This document shows positions 1 to 9,254 of a stretch of DNA of 9,254 nucleotides, piece after piece (within the stretch, counting starts at the first letter, position 1; each line of letters opens with the position of its first letter). The notes beneath the pieces were generated by a model. The model was given only the letters and a program-made list of their open reading frames with translations, searched no databases and was not told the origin of the DNA. The stretch is from assembly GCA_000388065.2 (NCBI GenBank), contig KB932204.1; one strand, written 5' to 3'. The stretch is from Fonticula alba ATCC 38817 (taxonomy: Eukaryota > Protista > Nucleariida). A program made the translations under genes and the position numbers.

Positions 1-64
1 AGAGAGAGAGAGCGAGAGAGAGAGAGAGAGCGAGAGAGAGAGAGCGAGAGAGAGAGCGAGAGAG
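1..64 (+). repeat. Compound (GA)n microsatellite with GAGC interruptions, truncated at the window start
   Basis: Direct reading; corresponds to the 3' part of the tract at 7181-7326. Confidence 0.95.
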
Positions 65-517
65 GGAAAGAGAAAAAGAGAAAAAGGTCTCATCCCGCGC
101 GCGTCCATGCAGCTGCCGCGTTCCGGAAACACCCCCGGCCGGTTCCGGGCGTGAGGCCCCAGCAGAGACCTGGCCTATCCGTTGGCAGTCGCCACTCTGG
201 TGCCCGATCGCACGTCCGATCTCGCAGCAGCGGAACCCCCGGGACCGAGCACAAACGCAATGGGGGCGTTCTGATCCTGCCCCCCCCCCCCCCCCCCCTC
301 TCCTGGCGGGCCCAGGGCCGGTCGCCTGCCAGGCTCGTGGCACGGCGGCCGATCTGTCCCAAGATCGACGCATACAGAGGGCGGAGGGCAAAAAAAAAAA
401 CAAAAAAACAAATCCCCCCGCCCCCGTCGCCTGGCTGTTGGCCTGCATCAACCCCCTTCACCCGCTCGCCGCCACCTCCCCCGCACCTCTCCCCCCGCCC
501 CTTCCCGCCCTGACATC

Positions 518-1830
518 ATGGCCACCACCAGCCCCTTCCCGGCGACCGAGCCGGAACTTGTCAAACTCCCGCTCCTCGCCATCGAAAAGCGCTTCATCAA
601 TGACTGCATCCGAGGTTCGGCCCCTGCTCGCGTGTCACGCTCCCTCGTCTTCGCGCTCCCCCTTGCCCCCCGCCGCACGATGCCACACTTGTTAACCTGC
701 CTCCTCCTCGCCACCCACCGCCAGCCATCTGCCACAGCATCTTCCTTGCCCGGCACTTGGACCAGGTTCGCCCGAAGGACTTCCACGCAACGGACCCCGA
801 TGCCGCAGGACTCGACGTTGTGTGGGTGCGACCGCCCCCCCTCCCCCTACCCCCGCCCCCTCTTCTGCTGCCTTCGGTCTTCTTACCCTGCCCCATGCTC
901 CCCTCCGGCACCAGGCCGGTCCCGACATCTTCGGCTCGTCCGAGGGCCCCGCTGCCGACTCCTCGAGCAAGTCCATCCAGCACTTCTTCAACACCCTCAG
1001 CGAATCCTTCATCAAGGAAATCCCCCAACGCTTGTCTCAGGTCCAGGTGACCTCACAGCCGCAGCCCACCTCCTCGGACGACATCTATATCGACATTTAC
1101 GATGTGACCAGCGTCCCGGCCGATGCTCTGGGACAATCGCCCGATCGCGCTGCCGGGCCACCCCCCGGACGCCACCTCGAGCGGTGGGTTCTCCCCATTC
1201 AACTTTTGACCGACTCCAGCCGCGGCCCGGTGGAGCTCTTCAACATCGAAGCCCCGCGCCCCGGTGGAGGTGCTCTTCCCCCGCCCGACAACTCGCCCGG
1301 GGCGGTGGATGGTGCGCCCTCTCGACGGCTCCCTCCTCGTCCCCCTTGCTCCTGTTCCCCCCCCCCCCCCCACACACACACACCTTGGCTTGCATCTTTG
1401 CGGCCCCCTGACACCCGATGGCCCCCTCCCCCTGTACCACCACCGATCCCCCCCCCCCCTTCGTAGCTCGCTTGAAGCTTGAGAACATCCTCGCTCGGAT
1501 CGGCGCACACACCTTGGCCACGTCCAACTGGTGGGCTGACACCGGATCCGTGCGCGTGGCCTTGGTGGTATGAAGTCTCTCACCCTCCTGCCCCCTCAAG
1601 CACACGCACATACACACGCACATACACACGCACACACACACACACACACACACCTTTTCTCCCTCTCTCTCTCCCAACCCGGCTCTCAGCTCGTTTCGCC
1701 CCGACACCTGACCCCTCGCCCCCCTCCCCCGCCTGTCATCCTTCTGGCCTTGGTCAAATAGGTGGCCTTTAAGCCCAAAGATCGCCTCAATTTGTTCCGC
1801 TTCCCCCTTCCACTCCCCTTCATGCGGTGA
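518..1830 (+). CDS. ATG101: Autophagy-related protein 101-like (HORMA domain), 254 aa; join(518..614,725..825,915..1311,1467..1567,1762..1830)
   Basis: Four GT-AG introns (615-724, 826-914, 1312-1466, 1568-1761) give a continuous 765-nt frame ending in TGA. The spliced N-terminus 'INDCIRAICHSIFLARHLDQVRPKD' resembles the Atg101 motif (plant-like 'LRCILHTIFFHRALGLVRPKD'), and 'IYIDIYDV...HLERWVLPIQL' matches the 'LxFY...WExWxI' strands. Family call is from recalled motifs; no search was run. Confidence 0.72.
1601..1651 (+). repeat. (CA)n-rich microsatellite with CACACGCACATA units, in Atg101 intron 4
   Basis: Direct reading; second copy at 8863-8913. Confidence 0.9.
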
Positions 1831-1864
1831 AGAGAAAAAGAAGAGAACAGGTCAGAGAAGCACA

Positions 1865-1870
1865 TTTATT
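1865..1870 (-). terminator. Putative polyadenylation signal AATAAA for RNase H1
   Basis: TTTATT on the + strand, about 145 nt downstream of the RNase H1 stop codon. Confidence 0.5.
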
Positions 1871-1895
1871 CTTGCCCCTCTGGGACATCGGCCAC

Positions 1896-1901
1896 AATAA
1901 A
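1896..1901 (+). terminator. Putative polyadenylation signal AATAAA for the Atg101-like gene
   Basis: AATAAA 65 nt after the TGA, in otherwise GC-rich DNA. Confidence 0.55.
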
Positions 1902-1982
1902 GTACACACACATGTCTCGCCAACGGAGCGACAACCACCCTCGCGGGTTGTTGAAAAGCCCATCTCCTGGGAGACGCCCATC

Positions 1983-2006
1983 GAGAGAGAGAGAGAGAGA
2001 GAGAGA
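1983..2006 (+). repeat. (GA)12 microsatellite between the convergent Atg101 and RNase H1 genes
   Basis: Direct reading; the window end (9254) falls inside the second copy of this tract. Confidence 0.95.
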
Positions 2007-2015
2007 GGCAGCAAC

Positions 2016-3499
2016 CTACTTGGGGGGCAGGCTGCGTGAGCGATTGTATTGGTCGCTGCCTTGGTTTGCCAGCTGGTCGGCCATTTCGTTGCCCGGGATG
2101 CCGGAATGGGATTTGACATGCCGGAAAACCACCGCATCCCGCTCGACCGCATTGCGCTGATCGCACAGCTTCGAGATGTCCATGATGAGATCCTGATGAG
2201 AGACCGGCTGGCCGCCGGAAGTCTTAAAGCCATTGGTCTTCCATTTTGGCAGCCACTCATTGACGCCTGGACGAAGGGTCAATGCACGCGTCGAACGGGC
2301 GAAAGAGCCACGCACAAATGGCCCCCCATGGGCCACGTACTCTTGATGGCGTAGATGCTGTCGGAGTGGATGACAATATTCCGGTCCCCGGGAGCTGTCT
2401 CAAGAGCCCGCTTGATGGCCTGCAGTGGGATGGATGGTTGGCAAATCGAACAGCACCAAGGGGAGAGGCCGAAGGGGATGAAGGGAGGGCAACAGGGAAG
2501 GGGGAAAAGCGAAAGGAGGTACCTTCAATTCGGCGCGCGAGTTGGTGGCCGGCTCGGTCGGGGACAGGGGCTCCGCAAGGTTGCTGCTCCCATGTGCACG
2601 CACATGTTAGTGGGGGGGGGGGGAGCAGGCAAAGAGAAGGGATCAGAGGCCAGGGCCGCGAGAGGAAGGCCCTGCAGTCCCGGCGCAAAGGCCATCGATG
2701 GGCATACCGAGGATCGTGCGGGCCAAAGTAAACCCCCAGACCAGACCCATTCGGTCGCGAACTGCCATCCGTATAGATGTCGATGGATTGCCGAGTCGAT
2801 GCCGGGGCAGGGGGCGATCGGGCGGATGACCCGCTGGAGGAGCTCGACGATCTCGAAGTGGAGAGGGGGGAGGAATAGAAAGAGGAGGAGGAGGAGGAAG
2901 AGGAAGAAGAAGAAGAAGAAGAGGACCCACGCGTGGAGGAGGAGAAGCTCCTCCCGGAGGCACGATAGCCAGACGAATAGCTTGTCGGGTCGCGCGTGCT
3001 GTGCGAGGCCGCCGGCCTCGAGGAGGAATTACTGCCGGAACTTATGTAGCGCTGGGCCTCCTCGCGAGTGCGGAAGGACTTGAACTCGGCCCCGGAAAAG
3101 CCGCTCACCGAGGAGCTACACTCATCCCTGTGCCGATCGCCACGGAAAGTGCGCGGTTAGTTCGATTCCAATGACCCAGCCCGACGGGGGGGGGGGGGGG
3201 GGGGGGGGGGGTAGCAGGAAGCCATTGACGGACCAGGAAGAGTGGATGCCGGTCGAGCGGCCTGAGCGCACGGCGTAAAATTTGGCCTTCCCAGCCGAGG
3301 AACGGGGAGGCATGGCTGCTAAATCGGCGACCTGAGAGGTGACAGCAGGACCCGCGGCAGGGGGACAAGGGCGCGGAGCAGTGGAGGCGGGCTCTTTGGG
3401 GGCGAGGGAGAAGCTGAGCGACCGGTTCCAGGGCCGAACAATCAGGCGACCAATGAGTGAGTTCAGGGGGAGTGGAAGAAGAAAGCGACTCTGCGCCAT
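2016..3499 (-). CDS. RNASEH1: Ribonuclease H1 (N-terminal hybrid-binding domain, Ser-rich linker, RNase H domain); complement(join(2016..2266,2341..2419,2523..2583,2708..3127,3234..3313 or 3499)); 296 aa from ATG 3313, 358 aa from ATG 3499
   Basis: Introns 3233-3128, 2707-2584, 2522-2420 and 2340-2267 are all GT-AG and frame-consistent. HBD: 'KFYAVRSGRSTGIHSSWDEC...VSGFSGAEFKSF'. Catalytic motifs: YTDGS, TNSRAEL, IHSDSIY, WKTNGFKT, HVKSHSG, GNEMADQLA. Confidence 0.95.
2878..2933 (-). repeat. TCC/TCT trinucleotide tract encoding poly-Ser in the RNase H1 linker
   Basis: (GAG)n/(GAA)n on the + strand; translates as SSSSSSSSSSSSSSSFYSS in exon 2. Confidence 0.85.
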
Positions 3500-3994
3500 G
3501 TGAGACGGCGGAGGGCAGGCAGGAGGGGGGCGGGCGGGGGAGGGAAAAGGGGGCGAGGGATCTCGCGCGGCTGAAACAGAAGATGAATGCCGCTCGCGGA
3601 GTGGGGGATGGCGGTGAAACGGGGCGAACGTCCGGAGAAGAAATGTTGCCTACAGATTAGGATCGGCCTGGCCCGTTCCCGCCCCCGCCCTCGCCCCCCG
3701 GTCCCGCCCGGCTCGGCTCTCGTTGCCACGATCCTCCCCCCCCCCCCTCCCCCCCCCCCGCGGCCCTGGGGGCCGATCTGTCCGGACACTGTGATATCCC
3801 CACGGAGGTGTCACGTGCACACCGTGGAAACACCATTTCACCCCAGGCCCGAGGAATAAGGCGCTGCTCGGTGCCGGCGCAGAGCGGCCCCGGGGGCGCG
3901 GAGCCCCAGAGAGTAAAGGTGTGCTGTCCACCTCGCCCTCTTTCCTCCCTCCCCCCCTCCCCCGCTCCCCCTCGCCCACCTTTTTTTCCCTGAG
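3500..3994. promoter_or_regulatory. Probable bidirectional promoter between divergent RNase H1 and J-domain genes (495 bp)
   Basis: Head-to-head start codons at 3499 (-) and 3995 (+). Contains inverted GGCCGATC motifs, C-runs and a CACGTG dyad. Confidence 0.55.
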
Positions 3995-4927
3995 ATGTTC
4001 CCCTTCCACGCTTCGCCTCTCGCCACCGGCCGCCGTGGCTACGCCACCGCCGCCGGTGCCGCCGCCGGCGCCAAGGACTTCGCCCAGGAGGAGCTCTTCG
4101 CCCGGACCCTGCTCGGCAACACCCACATGTCCCACTACCAGGTTCTCGGCCTGCCGGAGCCGGTGTTCGACCTGAGCCTCAGCTCGGCCGAGGCCGTGGC
4201 CTCCGCCAACAAGGCCTCCAGCCGTGAGATCCGCCACGCCTACTACAAGCTGTCCATGCGCTTCCACCCGGATCGCCTGCCGGCCGCGGCCTCCGCCGCC
4301 TGGGGCAAGCCCGCGTACACCCGCATCACCGACTCCTACGCCACCCTGGCCAACCCGGACACCCGCGCCGCCTACGACCAGTCCATCTTCCGCGAGGCCT
4401 CCACCCGCGCCGCGGCCCTGACCTCCTCCCGTGGCCGTCAGTACCAGTTCCACACCTCCTCCGGTGTTAACCCCTCCTTCGCGGCCAACACCAACGCCTC
4501 GGCCTTCTCGGACTTCACCCGCCAGAGCTACCGCCCCTTCGACAACTACAACGCCTTCCACCAGGCCTACAAGCACCACCATGGTGCCGCCTTCGGTCGC
4601 TACTCCGCCGACAGCACCTCCCACCAGGGTGACAACCGCTTCGACATCGGCAACGGCACTGCCGCCCGCATGGCCGACCGCGCCGCCGAGTATGCCCGCC
4701 ACGCTGCCCGCACCACCGGCAGCGCCGCCCGCTTCATGGACCCGGAGCTGGCCGCCAAGATCGCCAAGAAGCAGGCCCTCCCTCGCCGCTTCCTCCTCCC
4801 CTCCCTGACCGTCATGGCTACTCTTGGCGTTGTCGGCCTTGCGGCCATCTACGCCCTCAACGACCGGCCCAGCTCCCTGGAGCTGGACAACCGCCGTTTC
4901 CAGAAGACCCGTCGTGCCTTCGACTAA
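3995..4927 (+). CDS. Class C J-domain (DnaJ-like) protein, 310 aa, with probable mitochondrial presequence and a C-terminal transmembrane helix
   Basis: Single ORF with strong C-ending codon bias. J-domain: 'HYQVLGL...EIRHAYYKLSMRFHPDR...RAAYD' (HPD at 4265-4273). N-terminal 'GRRGYA' resembles an R-2/R-3 cleavage motif. Hydrophobic segment 'FLLPSLTVMATLGVVGLAAIYAL'. Confidence 0.9.
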   Translation: MFPFHASPLATGRRGYATAAGAAAGAKDFAQEELFARTLLGNTHMSHYQVLGLPEPVFDLSLSSAEAVASANKASSREIRHAYYKLSMRFHPDRLPAAASAAWGKPAYTRITDSYATLANPDTRAAYDQSIFREASTRAAALTSSRGRQYQFHTSSGVNPSFAANTNASAFSDFTRQSYRPFDNYNAFHQAYKHHHGAAFGRYSADSTSHQGDNRFDIGNGTAARMADRAAEYARHAARTTGSAARFMDPELAAKIAKKQALPRRFLLPSLTVMATLGVVGLAAIYALNDRPSSLELDNRRFQKTRRAFD

Positions 4928-5932
4928 GTACCTCTAGCGCACGCATGTACCCTGTACACGCATGCATATGTACCACGAGGGGGGCGGGGGAGCAGGAGCG
5001 CGCGGCCGACAGCGGCCATCGACCGGCCACGGGACGACGGGCGGGGCCCACTCCTCCGTCATGGCAGTAGACAATCCGACAAGCCAGTGTGACGGCCAGG
5101 ATGCGCTGTCCCTGTTGTCCGGGACGGAACATGGCTTCGCCAATCGGCGGCCCTGTGTTTGCCGAGCCCGCGCTCCTCGCTGTCCCCTGCCCCCCTCCCC
5201 CCTCTCTCCCGCTCGCTCTGTCTGTCCCCTTCCTCCTCGCCTCCCCCCATGTATTCGCCATTTTGGAGGGAGTCCAAAAGGTGTCTTCTCATGGCCTCAC
5301 TCACATATATATATATCTACACACACACACACATCCCTATATATGTATCCGTCCAGCTGGGCTCGGCCAATGGTAAAGGGTTAGCAAGGCCGGCGCTCGT
5401 CCGCCTTTTTTCCCATCCACCTCGGTGGGCCTCATGCATGTCTCGGCGCTTTTCACCCCCCTCCCCCCTCCTAAATACACACATATCATACAAGGCCCGT
5501 GGCGGCAATGCGGGCCAAGCTGCGGCAGGGGGAGGCAGACACAGTAAACGATTGTGTGTGTAGAGGCTCTTGGTGCGAGCCCCGCAGTACGAGACGAGGG
5601 CTCCCATGTCCTTGGATGTCAGCCTGCACCTGCGCGATCCTCCTGCAGGCCAAAAGGAGGCCCAGGGAGAGCCCAGGCAAGGAGCAGCCGCTCGGTGAAG
5701 AACTGGCCCCTCAGCCCCATCTCACCCCTTGCCCTCCCATCCCCAGCGATATAGACACAAGGAAACACCCCCATCTTGTGGGGAGGGGGGGGGGGGGCGG
5801 GAAGCGCTATCCAGGGGACCCCTCCATTCGGCGTGTACGTGCGTGCGCGGGTGCTACGCGAGCGGCGGAGGGGGGATCGGACTGGACCAACAAAGGGTGC
5901 CCCCTCAAACAGGAATGGCCAAAAAAAAACAC

Positions 5933-5942
5933 NNNNNNNNNN
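5933..5942. other. Assembly/scaffold gap (10 N) between an A-run and a C18 run
   Basis: Ns in the sequence; true gap length unknown. Confidence 0.99.
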
Positions 5943-5996
5943 CCCCCCCCCCCCCCCCCCTCACCCCTTTCCTTTGCCCCCATCCCGAGCCCTGTC

Positions 5997-6924
5997 ATGT
6001 CTGTCGCCAACGTCCTCCGGCCCACCTTTAACCTGGCTCTTCGGCCGCGGCTCTTCGCCACCGGCACTTTCGCCGCCTACCGCGTGTCCTTCGGCTTCAA
6101 TCAAACGGGCGGAGTCCGGTCCGCGCAGCTGCCCGAGAGGCTCCTCATTCAGGATGTCTCCTTCTCGGTGCAGCCCGGCTCGGCGGTCCTCCTCCATGGC
6201 CCCAACGGCTCGGGCAAGACCACGCTCATGCGGCTGGCCGCCGGTGAGTTGATCCCCACGTCCGGGATATTCACCTGGCGCGGGCAGCCATTCACCCATG
6301 CGGCGGACCTCAGCAAGTGGGCGCACCAGCACATGGTCGAGATGCCGGCCCTCAATGACGGCATGAGCAACCTGCTCACCGTGCGCATCATGATGCGGAT
6401 TTTCTCCCTCCGCCGTGGCTTTGGCGGCAAGGAGATTGATGAGGCTCTCCACATGTTCAAGATCTACCATCTCCGGTGTGTCCCGCCGCCGTCGCCCTCC
6501 TCGAGCCTGGCCCTCCCCCCTTCGCCTTCCCCCCTGGCATGGTGCACATGATCCTAACCTTGGTCTCCCCCCCCTCTCCCCCTCTCCTCCCTCCGACTCA
6601 GCAATCGGAGAATCGGCACCCTCTCCACTGGGCAGCGACGCCTGGTGGCATTCGCCAACATGTGGGCCTCCCAGCGACTCATTTGGCTGTTGGACGAGCC
6701 GAACATTGCCCTTGATCTCCGGTGCGTGCCGACCCCTCCACCGACGCCAGCTTGTGGCCATGCCTTCCCGAATGGGCTTACTGACCGGCCGCACACACAC
6801 CTCCAGCTCGCAGGCCGGCATCGAGGAGGCCATTCGCATGCACCGCGATCGTGGCGGCATCGTCATCGTTGCCTCCCACGCAAACATTGTCCTCGAAGAC
6901 GCCGTGTCCATCCGTATTCGCTGA
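5997..6924 (+). CDS. ccmA: Heme exporter ABC ATPase CcmA-like (cytochrome c maturation System I), 238 aa, nuclear-type with introns; join(5997..6475,6602..6721,6807..6924)
   Basis: GT-AG introns 6476-6601 (branch CTAAC) and 6722-6806 (branch CTGAC) give a 717-nt frame. Walker A GPNGSGKTT, signature LSTGQRR, Walker B IWLLDEP and C-terminal 'HRDRGGIVIVASH' are typical of CcmA. No transmembrane domain. The Arg-rich, acid-free N-terminus looks like a presequence. Confidence 0.85.
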
Positions 6925-7180
6925 TGCGGATCCTGGCTCGGCTGCCGCCGACCCCGACCCCCTCCCGTCAGCCCTTCTCCCAGCCGGGCGCACAATCCCC
7001 CCTCCCCTAGCCCTCTTCCCATTGTTTTCCTCCCCCTCTCCCCCCTTTAGACCGCGCCCCCGGAGGAGAAGGGAGCCCAGTGGTGGGGCTGCGCGCGCCC
7101 TGCTCGAAAGTAACATGCAAAATACACCCCACCCCTTCGAATGCCCCACCCGCGCCCCCACGTACCAGAGCCGGAGAGCT

Positions 7181-7211
7181 AGAGAGAGAGAGAGAGAGAG
7201 AGAGCGAGAGG

Positions 7212-7243
<32 letters not shown>

Positions 7244-7249
7244 GAGAGC

Positions 7250-7287
<38 letters not shown>

Positions 7288-7326
7288 GAGAGCGAGAGAG
7301 AGAGAGCGAGAGAGAGAGCGAGAGAG
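7181..7326 (+). repeat. Compound (GA)n microsatellite, about 146 bp, with GAGC interruptions, followed by a purine-only run
   Basis: Direct reading; contains the start of the duplicated segment at 7263. Confidence 0.95.
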
Positions 7327-9254
7327 GGAAAGAGAAAAAGAGAAAAAGGTCTCATCCCGCGCGCGTCCATGCAGCTGCCGCGTTCCGGAAACACCCCCGG
7401 CCGGTTCCGGGCGTGAGGCCCCAGCAGAGACCTGGCCTATCCGTTGGCAGTCGCCACTCTGGTGCCCGATCGCACGTCCGATCTCGCAGCAGCGGAACCC
7501 CCGGGACCGAGCACAAACGCAATGGGGGCGTTCTGATCCTGCCCCCCCCCCCCCCCCCCCTCTCCTGGCGGGCCCAGGGCCGGTCGCCTGCCAGGCTCGT
7601 GGCACGGCGGCCGATCTGTCCCAAGATCGACGCATACAGAGGGCGGAGGGCAAAAAAAAAAACAAAAAAACAAATCCCCCCGCCCCCGTCGCCTGGCTGT
7701 TGGCCTGCATCAACCCCCTTCACCCGCTCGCCGCCACCTCCCCCGCACCTCTCCCCCCGCCCCTTCCCGCCCTGACATCATGGCCACCACCAGCCCCTTC
7801 CCGGCGACCGAGCCGGAACTTGTCAAACTCCCGCTCCTCGCCATCGAAAAGCGCTTCATCAATGACTGCATCCGAGGTTCGGCCCCTGCTCGCGTGTCAC
7901 GCTCCCTCGTCTTCGCGCTCCCCCTTGCCCCCCGCCGCACGATGCCACACTTGTTAACCTGCCTCCTCCTCGCCACCCACCGCCAGCCATCTGCCACAGC
8001 ATCTTCCTTGCCCGGCACTTGGACCAGGTTCGCCCGAAGGACTTCCACGCAACGGACCCCGATGCCGCAGGACTCGACGTTGTGTGGGTGCGACCGCCCC
8101 CCCTCCCCCTACCCCCGCCCCCTCTTCTGCTGCCTTCGGTCTTCTTACCCTGCCCCATGCTCCCCTCCGGCACCAGGCCGGTCCCGACATCTTCGGCTCG
8201 TCCGAGGGCCCCGCTGCCGACTCCTCGAGCAAGTCCATCCAGCACTTCTTCAACACCCTCAGCGAATCCTTCATCAAGGAAATCCCCCAACGCTTGTCTC
8301 AGGTCCAGGTGACCTCACAGCCGCAGCCCACCTCCTCGGACGACATCTATATCGACATTTACGATGTGACCAGCGTCCCGGCCGATGCTCTGGGACAATC
8401 GCCCGATCGCGCTGCCGGGCCACCCCCCGGACGCCACCTCGAGCGGTGGGTTCTCCCCATTCAACTTTTGACCGACTCCAGCCGCGGCCCGGTGGAGCTC
8501 TTCAACATCGAAGCCCCGCGCCCCGGTGGAGGTGCTCTTCCCCCGCCCGACAACTCGCCCGGGGCGGTGGATGGTGCGCCCTCTCGACGGCTCCCTCCTC
8601 GTCCCCCTTGCTCCTGTTCCCCCCCCCCCCCCCACACACACACACCTTGGCTTGCATCTTTGCGGCCCCCTGACACCCGATGGCCCCCTCCCCCTGTACC
8701 ACCACCGATCCCCCCCCCCCCTTCGTAGCTCGCTTGAAGCTTGAGAACATCCTCGCTCGGATCGGCGCACACACCTTGGCCACGTCCAACTGGTGGGCTG
8801 ACACCGGATCCGTGCGCGTGGCCTTGGTGGTATGAAGTCTCTCACCCTCCTGCCCCCTCAAGCACACGCACATACACACGCACATACACACGCACACACA
8901 CACACACACACACACCTTTTCTCCCTCTCTCTCTCCCAACCCGGCTCTCAGCTCGTTTCGCCCCGACACCTGACCCCTCGCCCCCCTCCCCCGCCTGTCA
9001 TCCTTCTGGCCTTGGTCAAATAGGTGGCCTTTAAGCCCAAAGATCGCCTCAATTTGTTCCGCTTCCCCCTTCCACTCCCCTTCATGCGGTGAAGAGAAAA
9101 AGAAGAGAACAGGTCAGAGAAGCACATTTATTCTTGCCCCTCTGGGACATCGGCCACAATAAAGTACACACACATGTCTCGCCAACGGAGCGACAACCAC
9201 CCTCGCGGGTTGTTGAAAAGCCCATCTCCTGGGAGACGCCCATCGAGAGAGAGA
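7263..9254. repeat. Direct repeat copy 2 (1992 bp) of 1-1992
   Basis: See copy 1. Confidence 0.97.
7780..9092 (+). CDS. ATG101: Second identical copy of the Atg101-like gene; join(7780..7876,7987..8087,8177..8573,8729..8829,9024..9092)
   Basis: Exact duplicate of 518..1830 at +7262; may be the same locus emitted twice by the assembler. Confidence 0.7.

What the first reader, a model, noticed from the sequence alone, without database searches (positions are those of the whole stretch)
1..9254. 7262-bp four-gene unit with a 1992-bp perfect terminal overlap: candidate circular nuclear DNA or tandem amplicon
Seen: 1-1992 equals 7263-9254 with no visible differences, even in introns and microsatellites, and both ends fall in GA tracts. 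Circularised, the unit holds four complete spliceosomal-intron genes with their flanks, and no gene is cut. The join at 1992/1993 looks genuine, because the RNase H1 AATAAA (1865-1870, - strand) lies inside the repeated segment. The second copy ends with that same signal, which predicts RNase H1 again after 9254. The N-gap join resembles the A-run then C-run layout upstream of Atg101. Inference: a circular mini-chromosome or eccDNA formed by GA-tract recombination, or a head-to-tail array, carrying housekeeping genes and no recognisable replication gene. A strong alternative is an assembly loop through the 146-bp GA tract, or a false scaffold link at the gap (the linear order 5943-9254 + 1993-5932 needs no circle).
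Basis: partly seen in the sequence, partly recalled or inferred. Interest (0 to 1): 0.75.

Follow-up and report, generated by a model that had tools for sequence, protein, structure and literature searches.

The report
Duplicated contig ends from scaffolding error
The exact 1992-base repeat is real in the file, but the window is a gap-bounded block inside a 3-Mb scaffold, and the "circle" is most likely two overlapping contigs placed in the wrong order, so it is an assembly artefact rather than a circular or amplified piece of DNA.

Summary
Observation confirmed: window 1-1992 equals 7263-9254 with 0 mismatches, and both outer ends lie in GA tracts. The window is not a molecule. It is C4:84394-93647 of a 3,073,782-bp scaffold, bounded by 2250 N on the left and 1780 N on the right, with a 10-N gap inside. 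The layout is [gap] A-B [10N] C-A [gap]. Only the joins A|B and C|A are read in sequence, so a single-copy linear order C-A-B explains every sequenced base. The B|C join that would close a circle is unread. 10 N is the smallest gap size seen. Four other 10-N gaps nearby split a single homopolymer, but this one joins unlike ends. I verified a second block 261 kb away on the same scaffold with the same architecture: gap-bounded, 10-N gap inside, 1985-bp identical ends, and copy 2 stopping inside a kinase exon. Earlier first-reader notes of this scan list at least three further "closes on itself" windows in this genome (not checked here), so the scan has met this pattern before on other DNA. In 219 kb there is no other duplication of 90% identity or more. 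Best reading: gap-associated false duplication (about 0.75). A real chromosomal duplication is about 0.18 and a free circle about 0.03. Read depth or long reads would decide. Interest is low.

The parts
1..1992 (.). Segment A, copy 1. It forms the left end of contig A-B and starts directly after a 2250-N scaffold gap (C4:82144-84393).
   Evidence: Identical to 7263-9254; exactly two copies in the whole assembly; N run immediately to the left.
1993..5932 (.). Segment B, single copy in the assembly. It carries RNase H1 and the DnaJ gene.
   Evidence: One full-length match in G000.
5933..5942 (.). Scaffold gap of 10 N, the minimum gap size used in this assembly. It lies between unlike ends (...A9CAC | C18).
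   Evidence: Gap sizes in 219 kb: 10 (five times), then 27, 41, 65 and upward. The other four 10-N gaps split a single homopolymer.
5943..7262 (.). Segment C, single copy. It starts with C18 and carries the ccmA-like gene.
   Evidence: One full-length match in G000; homopolymer list.
7263..9254 (.). Segment A, copy 2. It forms the right end of contig C-A and is followed directly by a 1780-N gap (C4:93648-95427).
7181..7349 (.). Imperfect GA tract between C and A. Copy 1 of A begins inside the equivalent of this tract. Its internal exact repeats reach 51 nt (period 44).
1983..2009 (.). (GA)13 tract spanning the A|B boundary. Copy 2 of A ends inside its equivalent.
518..1295 (+). ATG101-like gene with at least 3 exons, read by eye; the identification is weak. 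A candidate + strand AATAAA lies at 1896.
   Evidence: Exon 721-852 hits PF07855 at E 0.036 only. A six-frame PF07855 search of the genome found nothing, and nothing in the controls either. Translation; AATAAA.
2016..3499 (-). RNase H1 gene (N-terminal hybrid-binding domain plus RNase H domain, several exons). The stop codon is at 2016-2018 and the inferred 3' UTR runs into A, with AATAAA at 1865-1870 on the - strand.
   Evidence: PF01693 on two exons; PF00075 E 5.8e-12 on 2019-2399; translation and stop codon; AATAAA.
3995..4927 (+). J-domain (DnaJ) protein gene, a 310-aa open frame.
   Evidence: PF00226 E 2.4e-10; translation.
5997..6924 (+). CcmA-like ABC ATPase gene, three exons by eye. 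The ATG is 55 nt right of the gap.
   Evidence: TIGR01189 is the best hit for exon 1 (E 2.4e-13) and exon 2 (E 8.3e-11); PF00005; translation.

Best explanation
This is a gap-associated false duplication in a short-read scaffold. The genome most likely holds one copy of the 7.26-kb stretch in the linear order C-A-B (ccmA-like, ATG101-like, RNase H1, DnaJ), lying between neighbours X and Y. Two contigs cover it. C-A (3312 bp) and A-B (5932 bp) both contain A. The scaffolder put them in the wrong order, A-B before C-A, and wrote the minimum 10-N gap between ends that are not neighbours. That places the shared 1992 bp at the two outer ends of the block, next to the residual gaps. Shown: the scaffold embedding, the single-copy status of B and C, the absence of any read junction other than A|B and C|A, the minimum gap size, and the recurrence of the architecture. 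Inferred: the way A came to be written twice. The most likely route is a gap-filling step that extends contig flanks into gaps without re-ordering contigs, as Pilon does. The alternative is two overlapping contigs that were never merged.
For: (1) The window is C4:84394-93647 of a 3,073,782-bp scaffold and is bounded by 2250 N and 1780 N. (2) A has exactly 2 copies in the assembly, and B and C have 1 each. The only joins read in sequence are A|B and C|A, and both fit a single linear C-A-B. Both outer ends of the repeat are contig ends, so no breakpoint X|A or A|Y has been observed. (3) 10 N is the smallest gap size among 38 gaps in 219 kb. The four other 10-N gaps split a single homopolymer (C23|C19, C4|C10, G2|G4, G2|G5), whereas this one joins ...A9CAC to C18. 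(4) A second case, checked here, is C4:354762-363334. It is gap-bounded, has an internal gap of exactly 10 N between C12 and G38, and has ends identical over 1985 bp at 100%. Copy 2 stops inside a protein-kinase coding exon. (5) Earlier first-reader notes list at least 3 more 'closes on itself' windows and several 'contigs out of order' scaffolds in this genome (unverified leads). (6) In 219 kb the only self-match of at least 120 bp and 90% identity is this pair, so there is no background of older duplications. (7) The copy of A that stops in the GA tract stops where exact internal repeats of up to 51 nt begin. The other copy reads straight through. This fits two assembly steps with different k. 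(8) In the re-ordered layout X (ending in C23) meets C (starting with C18), like against like. This is weak evidence, because about 40% of contig ends here are poly-C. (9) Literature: false duplications are typically separated by an assembly gap, whereas true ones are not (PMC9516828). Pilon shrinks unclosed gaps by extending both flanks, never re-orders scaffolds, uses K=47, and ran in the Broad production pipeline (PMC4237348).
Against: No reads were available, so the copy number of A was not measured. A scaffolder normally needs read pairs linking B to C before it places A-B ahead of C-A, and if those pairs were genuine they would indicate a tandem copy. The assembly's X-to-Y span (13.3 kb) is nearer to two units (14.5 kb) than to one (7.3 kb), although gap estimates here look unreliable, since kb-sized gaps often lie between two halves of what looks like one homopolymer. 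It is not documented that this assembly was gap-filled with Pilon or any other tool. The default minimum gap of 10 in Pilon is my recollection, not something in the paper. The exact k-mer stop rule that I derived from this window failed on the second case. Why copy 2 ends where it does, at (GA)5 here and in unique sequence in case 2, is unexplained.
Confidence: 0.75

Rival explanations
1. A real, very recent chromosomal duplication. It would be either a full head-to-tail duplication X-[C A B]-[C A B]-Y, whose identical copies the assembler could only partly lay out, or a partial one (A-B-C-A). In that case ATG101, and possibly all four genes, would be present twice.
For: The scaffold order A-B then C-A implies that the scaffolder saw B-to-C links. 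The span from X to Y in the assembly (2250 + 9254 + 1780 = 13,284 bp) is close to two units (14.5 kb). C starts with a poly-C run of the kind that breaks contigs throughout this assembly, so a true B|C join could be hidden there.
Against: No junction specific to a duplication has been read. B and C are single copy in the assembly. The 10-N gap joins unlike ends, unlike the ordinary 10-N gaps. The same architecture, with an almost equal repeat length (1985 bp), occurs 261 kb away and there cuts a kinase exon at a contig end. There are no diverged duplications in 219 kb, so a class of duplications that are all 100% identical and all wrapped around a minimum-size gap looks procedural rather than biological. 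Perfect identity extends through the microsatellites and homopolymers.
Confidence: 0.18
2. An extrachromosomal circular DNA or mini-chromosome of 7262 bp (plus the gap), formed by recombination in GA tracts and carrying four housekeeping genes.
For: Only the formal closure of the window on itself, and the fact that no gene is cut when the unit is circularised.
Against: The block is scaffolded inside a 3.07-Mb scaffold with neighbours on both sides. The closing join is an unread minimum-size gap. No replication or partition function was found among the four identified genes. Identical-end blocks recur in the assembly, which an assembler habit explains better than many gene-sized circles do.
Confidence: 0.03

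Closest known systems
Gap-associated false duplications in draft assemblies (Ko et al. 2022, Genome Biol 23:205, PMC9516828; Kelley and Salzberg 2010, PMC2864568)
   Same: [quoted passage not shown] The effect on annotation would be a false gene gain (a second ATG101).
   Different: The published cases are mostly heterozygous haplotype copies or error-containing copies lying side by side across the gap. Here the copies are 100% identical and sit at the outer ends of a two-contig block, which points to swapped contig order plus overlap or extension rather than uncollapsed haplotypes. Read depth and pair discordance, the published criteria, could not be tested.
Partial gap filling by flank extension (Pilon, Walker et al. 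2014, PMC4237348)
   Same: According to the paper, unclosed captured gaps are shrunk by consensus extensions from each flank, scaffold order is never changed, and tandem repeats longer than K=47 stop the walk. Applied to two swapped contigs, this would write the sequence between them twice, at the outer ends, and stop in tandem repeats, as seen at the left end of both blocks.
   Different: It is not documented that this assembly went through Pilon. The exact stop position fits a k of 37-51 in this window but not by the same rule in the second case. The right-hand stops are unexplained.
Eukaryotic eccDNA or tandem amplicons
   Same: A gene-sized unit with head-to-tail closure at short repeats (GA tracts).
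   Different: No junction read, no depth evidence, embedded in a chromosome-scale scaffold, and a pattern that recurs with a fixed 10-N gap.

Membership tests
Assembly false duplication (gap-associated) | An assembly gap lies between the two copies, and the copies abut gaps or contig ends | tested here: met
   A 10-N gap lies between the copies, and both outer ends abut N runs of 2250 and 1780.
Assembly false duplication (gap-associated) | All read sequence is explained by a single-copy layout, with no junction unique to a second copy | tested here: met
   Only A|B and C|A are read. B and C are single copy, and A has two copies with no flanking context on their outer sides.
Assembly false duplication (gap-associated) | The same architecture recurs elsewhere in the same assembly | tested here: met
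   C4:354762-363334 has 1985-bp identical ends and an internal 10-N gap and is gap-bounded. Further cases appear only as unverified notes.
Assembly false duplication (gap-associated) | Read depth on each copy about half of the single-copy level, and discordant read pairs | not testable with these tools
Circular extrachromosomal DNA / mini-chromosome | The closing junction is read in sequence | tested here: not met
   The B|C join is 10 N, the minimum gap size, and joins unlike ends.
Circular extrachromosomal DNA / mini-chromosome | Physically separate from the chromosomes | tested here: not met
   The window is C4:84394-93647 of a 3,073,782-bp scaffold. This is assembly-level evidence only.
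Tandem duplication / amplicon | Elevated copy number of the unit, shown by depth or by a second assembled copy of B and C | tested here: inconclusive
   B and C occur once in the assembly, but identical copies would collapse. Depth is not available.
Tandem duplication / amplicon | A head-to-tail junction (B|C) distinct from the outer junctions (X|C, B|Y) | tested here: not met
   None of B|C, X|C, X|A, A|Y or B|Y is read; all fall in N runs.

The most novel reading that the evidence does not exclude
The identical-end blocks (this one, the one 261 kb away, and those noted elsewhere) are real. On this reading the genome carries a set of very recent 4-7-kb head-to-tail duplications, or excised circles, that arise by slippage or recombination at its abundant homopolymer and microsatellite tracts, and the assembler renders each of them as A-B-10N-C-A.
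Probability: 0.1. Interest if true: 0.55.

Novelty: not a real feature. Interest (0 to 1): 0.08.

Why it matters
The value is mostly quality control. If the artefact reading is right, the second ATG101-like gene copy in this assembly is a false gene gain. The order of contigs around C4:84-94 kb is wrong. Every other 'window closes on itself' note in this genome should be read as the same artefact unless read depth says otherwise. That saves follow-up effort on several apparent gene-sized circles. If it were real, it would show recurrent microsatellite- or homopolymer-mediated duplication of housekeeping genes in a unicellular relative of fungi, which would be of moderate interest.

Tried and rejected

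I obtained 219 kb of contiguous sequence plus 16 kb around the second case.

3. A six-frame PF07855 (ATG101) search of the genome found nothing, and nothing in the control genomes either, so it is uninformative. ATG101 rests on one weak exon hit and on reading the translation by eye.

4. The k-mer stop rule. In this window the block start is exactly the base after the first repeated k-mer met on a leftward walk, for k of 37-51. I fixed that rule and tested it on case 2, where it failed by 45 nt. I keep only the loose statement that both left block ends lie inside tandem repeats that loop at k of about 47 but not at large k.

5. A 95-bp (K-1) overlap signature across gaps: none in the 50 kb around the window.

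6. Like-with-like homopolymers at the re-ordered joins: X|C fits (C23|C18), but poly-C ends are so common (about 40% of contig ends) that this is weak. B ends with only one C.

7. Gap sizes as a test of one unit against two: both models predict the same X-to-A and A-to-Y distances, and the estimates fit only within about 2x.

8. Gene continuity across the joins: all joins are intergenic (the RNase H1 stop codon is 24 nt from 1992/1993, and the ccmA ATG is 55 nt from the gap), so there is no test there.

9. I did not run the search for homologous proteins for ORFs crossing the joins. Public short-read assemblies made from the same reads would break at the same homopolymers, and without genomic context the chance of an informative hit seemed too low for the cost.

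10. Spliced gene models were searched exon by exon, by reference only.

11. The assembler and pipeline of the public assembly could not be found in the papers searched.
Full report
**1. The observation**

Window 1-1992 and 7263-9254 are identical, with 0 mismatches over 1992 bases, and no neighbouring period fits (family D5). The only N run is 5933-5942. The window starts in a GA-type tract (1-87). The window ends inside the copy of a (GA)13 tract that in copy 1 runs 1983-2009.

**2. Where the window sits**

A search of the window's own assembly shows that the window is G000:C4:84394-93647, part of a scaffold of 3,073,782 bp in a 31.3-Mb, 214-scaffold assembly. It is bounded directly by N runs. 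2250 N lie on the left (C4:82144-84393) and 1780 N on the right (C4:93648-95427). 'Terminal overlap' therefore means only that the scan cut the window at scaffold gaps. The window is two contigs, A-B (5932 bp) and C-A (3312 bp), joined by 10 N. In the whole assembly A occurs exactly twice, and B (1993-5932) and C (5943-7262) occur once each. An N stretch could in principle also be sequence withheld by the operators. However, the varied lengths and the homopolymer ends match ordinary estimated scaffold gaps.

**3. What is actually read**

The only joins present as sequence are A|B (1992/1993) and C|A (7262/7263). Both outer ends of the repeat are contig ends next to gaps. No breakpoint of a duplication (X|A or A|Y) has been seen, and 1992 bp is simply how far two contigs overlap. 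A single linear order C-A-B (7262 bp) accounts for every sequenced base. A circle or tandem array needs the B|C join in addition, and that join is the unread gap.

**4. The gap (the test the scan's program asked for first)**

In 219 kb of contiguous scaffold (C4:44394-263647) there are 38 gaps, about one per 5.8 kb. Their sizes are 10 (five times), then 27, 41, 65, 71, 77, 95, 100 and upward to 4176. So 10 N is the smallest size seen. I take it to be a floor, written when the estimated distance is 10 or less, possibly negative.

- The four other 10-N gaps each split a single homopolymer (C23|C19, C4|C10, G2|G4, G2|G5). That is what a true adjacency broken by an unreadable run looks like.
- The gap in this window joins ...GGCCAAAAAAAAACAC to C18.
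- No coding sequence abuts the gap. The ccmA-like ATG is 55 nt to its right, and I found no gene in the last kb of B.
- Continuity and reading frame across the gap therefore cannot be established, and nothing in the sequence supports the join.

**5. Recurrence**

Earlier first-reader notes of this scan list other windows of this genome that 'close on themselves'. They are s1-065948 (6588-bp unit), s1-066341 (about 4.5 kb), s1-065655 (about 4.35 kb) and s1-065980 (5340 bp). Several other notes say that scaffold contigs are out of order. These are unverified leads.

I checked one myself, because it lies on my scaffold. C4:354762-363334 is bounded by N runs of at least 3762 on the left and 2366 on the right. 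It contains an internal gap of exactly 10 N (359740-359749). Its two ends are identical over 1985 bp at 100% (354762-356746 equals 361350-363334).

- There the 10-N gap lies between a C12 end and a G38 start, again unlike ends.
- The right end of copy 2 stops in the middle of a protein-kinase coding exon. The boundary falls inside the exon that matches Pkinase positions 1-70, and the next exon matches positions 74-192 at E 1.5e-32. The exon reads like casein kinase 2 alpha by eye.
- This is the same architecture, [gap] A-B [10 N] C-A [gap], with almost the same repeat length, in an unrelated gene neighbourhood.

Such a repeat of form points to a habit of the assembly process.

**6. No background of real duplications**

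A self-comparison of the 219 kb finds one match of at least 120 bp and 90% identity, and it is the 1992-bp pair itself. If local duplications arose naturally at an appreciable rate, some older, diverged ones should be visible. Instead the only ones seen are 100% identical and wrapped around a minimum-size gap.

**7. Why contigs break here**

Most gaps are bounded by poly-C or poly-G runs. 19 of 37 left ends and 22 of 37 right starts have four or more C or G. These runs lie on the transcribed strand of genes, and the GC skew follows gene orientation.

- In the re-ordered layout, X (ending in C23) would meet C (starting with C18), and B would meet Y (starting with C8).
- The X|C pairing is like against like, but poly-C ends are so common that this is weak support.
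- The two GA-tract ends, which are odd among the gap ends, become internal to the overlap in the re-ordered layout.

**8. How A may have been written twice (inferred)**

The GA tract 7181-7326 contains exact internal repeats of up to 51 nt (period 44) and none of 53 or more. Contig C-A reads straight through it. Contig A-B stops 64 nt into it. In the second case the left block end also lies inside a tandem repeat (period 18). This fits two steps with different word sizes: a primary assembly that can cross such tracts, and a later small-k extension of contig flanks into gaps that cannot.

The Pilon paper describes exactly such a step (PMC4237348). Unclosed captured gaps are shrunk by consensus extensions from each flank. 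Walks stop at tandem repeats longer than K=47. Scaffold order is never changed. The tool ran in the Broad production pipeline. If two neighbouring contigs had been swapped by the scaffolder, extending each into the gap on its outer side would rebuild the sequence that truly lies between them twice, at the outer ends of the pair. The gap between them would fall to the minimum.

Three cautions apply.

- I could not establish which assembler or gap filler was used.
- The default minimum gap of 10 in Pilon is my recollection, not in the paper.
- The exact stop rule that fits this window (block start equals the base after the first repeated k-mer, for k of 37-51) failed when applied, as fixed beforehand, to the second case.

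An alternative route to the same result is two overlapping contigs that were never merged. More generally, Ko et al. [quoted passage not shown]

**9. Gene content**

All gene models were searched exon by exon, by reference.

- **ATG101-like gene, + strand, about 518-1295.** It is identified only weakly: PF07855 at E 0.036 on one exon, a six-frame family search that found nothing, and the translation read by eye.
- **RNase H1, - strand, 3499 to 2016.** PF01693 matches two exons and PF00075 matches at E 5.8e-12. The stop codon is at 2016-2018.
- **J-domain protein, + strand, 3995-4927.** PF00226 at E 2.4e-10.
- **CcmA-like ABC ATPase, + strand, 5997-6924.** TIGR01189 is the best hit for two exons.

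None of the four has a replication or partition function.

**10. Rivals**

A real recent chromosomal duplication, either a full tandem [C A B]x2 or a partial A-B-C-A, cannot be excluded without reads. The scaffolder's order suggests that it saw some B-to-C links. The X-to-Y span in the assembly (13.3 kb) is nearer to two units than to one. However, both models predict the same X-to-A and A-to-Y distances. The estimates fit only within about twofold. Kb-sized gaps here often sit between two halves of what looks like one homopolymer. I give this reading about 0.18. A free circle is contradicted by the scaffold embedding and has no positive evidence, so about 0.03.

**11. Organism**

An earlier follow-up note names the genome as Fonticula alba. 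The size (31.3 Mb) and the high G+C fit what I recall of that assembly, listed as GCA_000388065.2 in bioRxiv 10.1101/2023.12.07.570557. I did not test the identification by sequence, and nothing in the verdict depends on it. The contig is not human.

**12. Limits**

- No read data can be reached with these tools.

The verdict therefore rests on the logic of the assembly layout and on recurrence, not on measured copy number.

**13. Verdict**

The circle or amplicon reading is not supported. This is not a real biological feature, and its interest is low except as a flag for the other identical-end windows in this genome and for a false second ATG101 gene.

Noticed in passing
window 5997-6924 (+): A nuclear, intron-containing gene whose exons hit CcmA (System I cytochrome c maturation ATPase, TIGR01189) better than any other ABC family. 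It has an N-terminal extension before the Walker A motif. Exon-level scores are below the whole-protein cut-off, so the subfamily call is open. This is already the subject of note s1-065946.
   Followed up: partly
C4:44394-263647 (loci L020-L023, L027-L043): The assembly is very gappy here, with 38 gaps in 219 kb. More than half of the contig ends are poly-C or poly-G runs. Several kb-sized 'estimated' gaps lie between two runs of the same base (for example C6|C13 with 3318 N and C13|C11 with 2780 N), so many gap sizes may be large overestimates of breaks inside a single homopolymer.
   Followed up: partly
window 280-298, 1357-1371, 3186-3211, 3736-3759, 5943-5960: Long C runs lie on the transcribed strand of each gene (as G runs on + for the - strand RNase H1), in upstream regions, introns and 3' regions. 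The GC skew switches sign with gene orientation (-0.1 to -0.4 over + strand genes, +0.14 to +0.28 over RNase H1). This is a strand-specific homopolymer habit of the genome.
   Followed up: no
L024:763-9335 (C4:354762-363334): A second gap-bounded block with 1985-bp identical ends and an internal 10-N gap between C12 and G38. It carries a protein-kinase gene (casein kinase 2 alpha-like by eye) that is cut at the end of copy 2. Its left end starts in an 18-nt tandem repeat (CCGCAGCCGGGACCGCAG).
   Followed up: yes
L021:2342-3202 (+) (C4:95989-96849): The block to the right of the window encodes an exon with a SKIP/SNW domain (PF02731, E 8.9e-7), probably the SNW1/Prp45 splicing factor gene.
   Followed up: no
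window 1865-1901: The convergent ATG101-like and RNase H1 genes have candidate AATAAA signals 26 nt apart on opposite strands (1896-1901 on +, 1865-1870 on -), so their 3' UTRs would overlap by some tens of bases.
   Followed up: no
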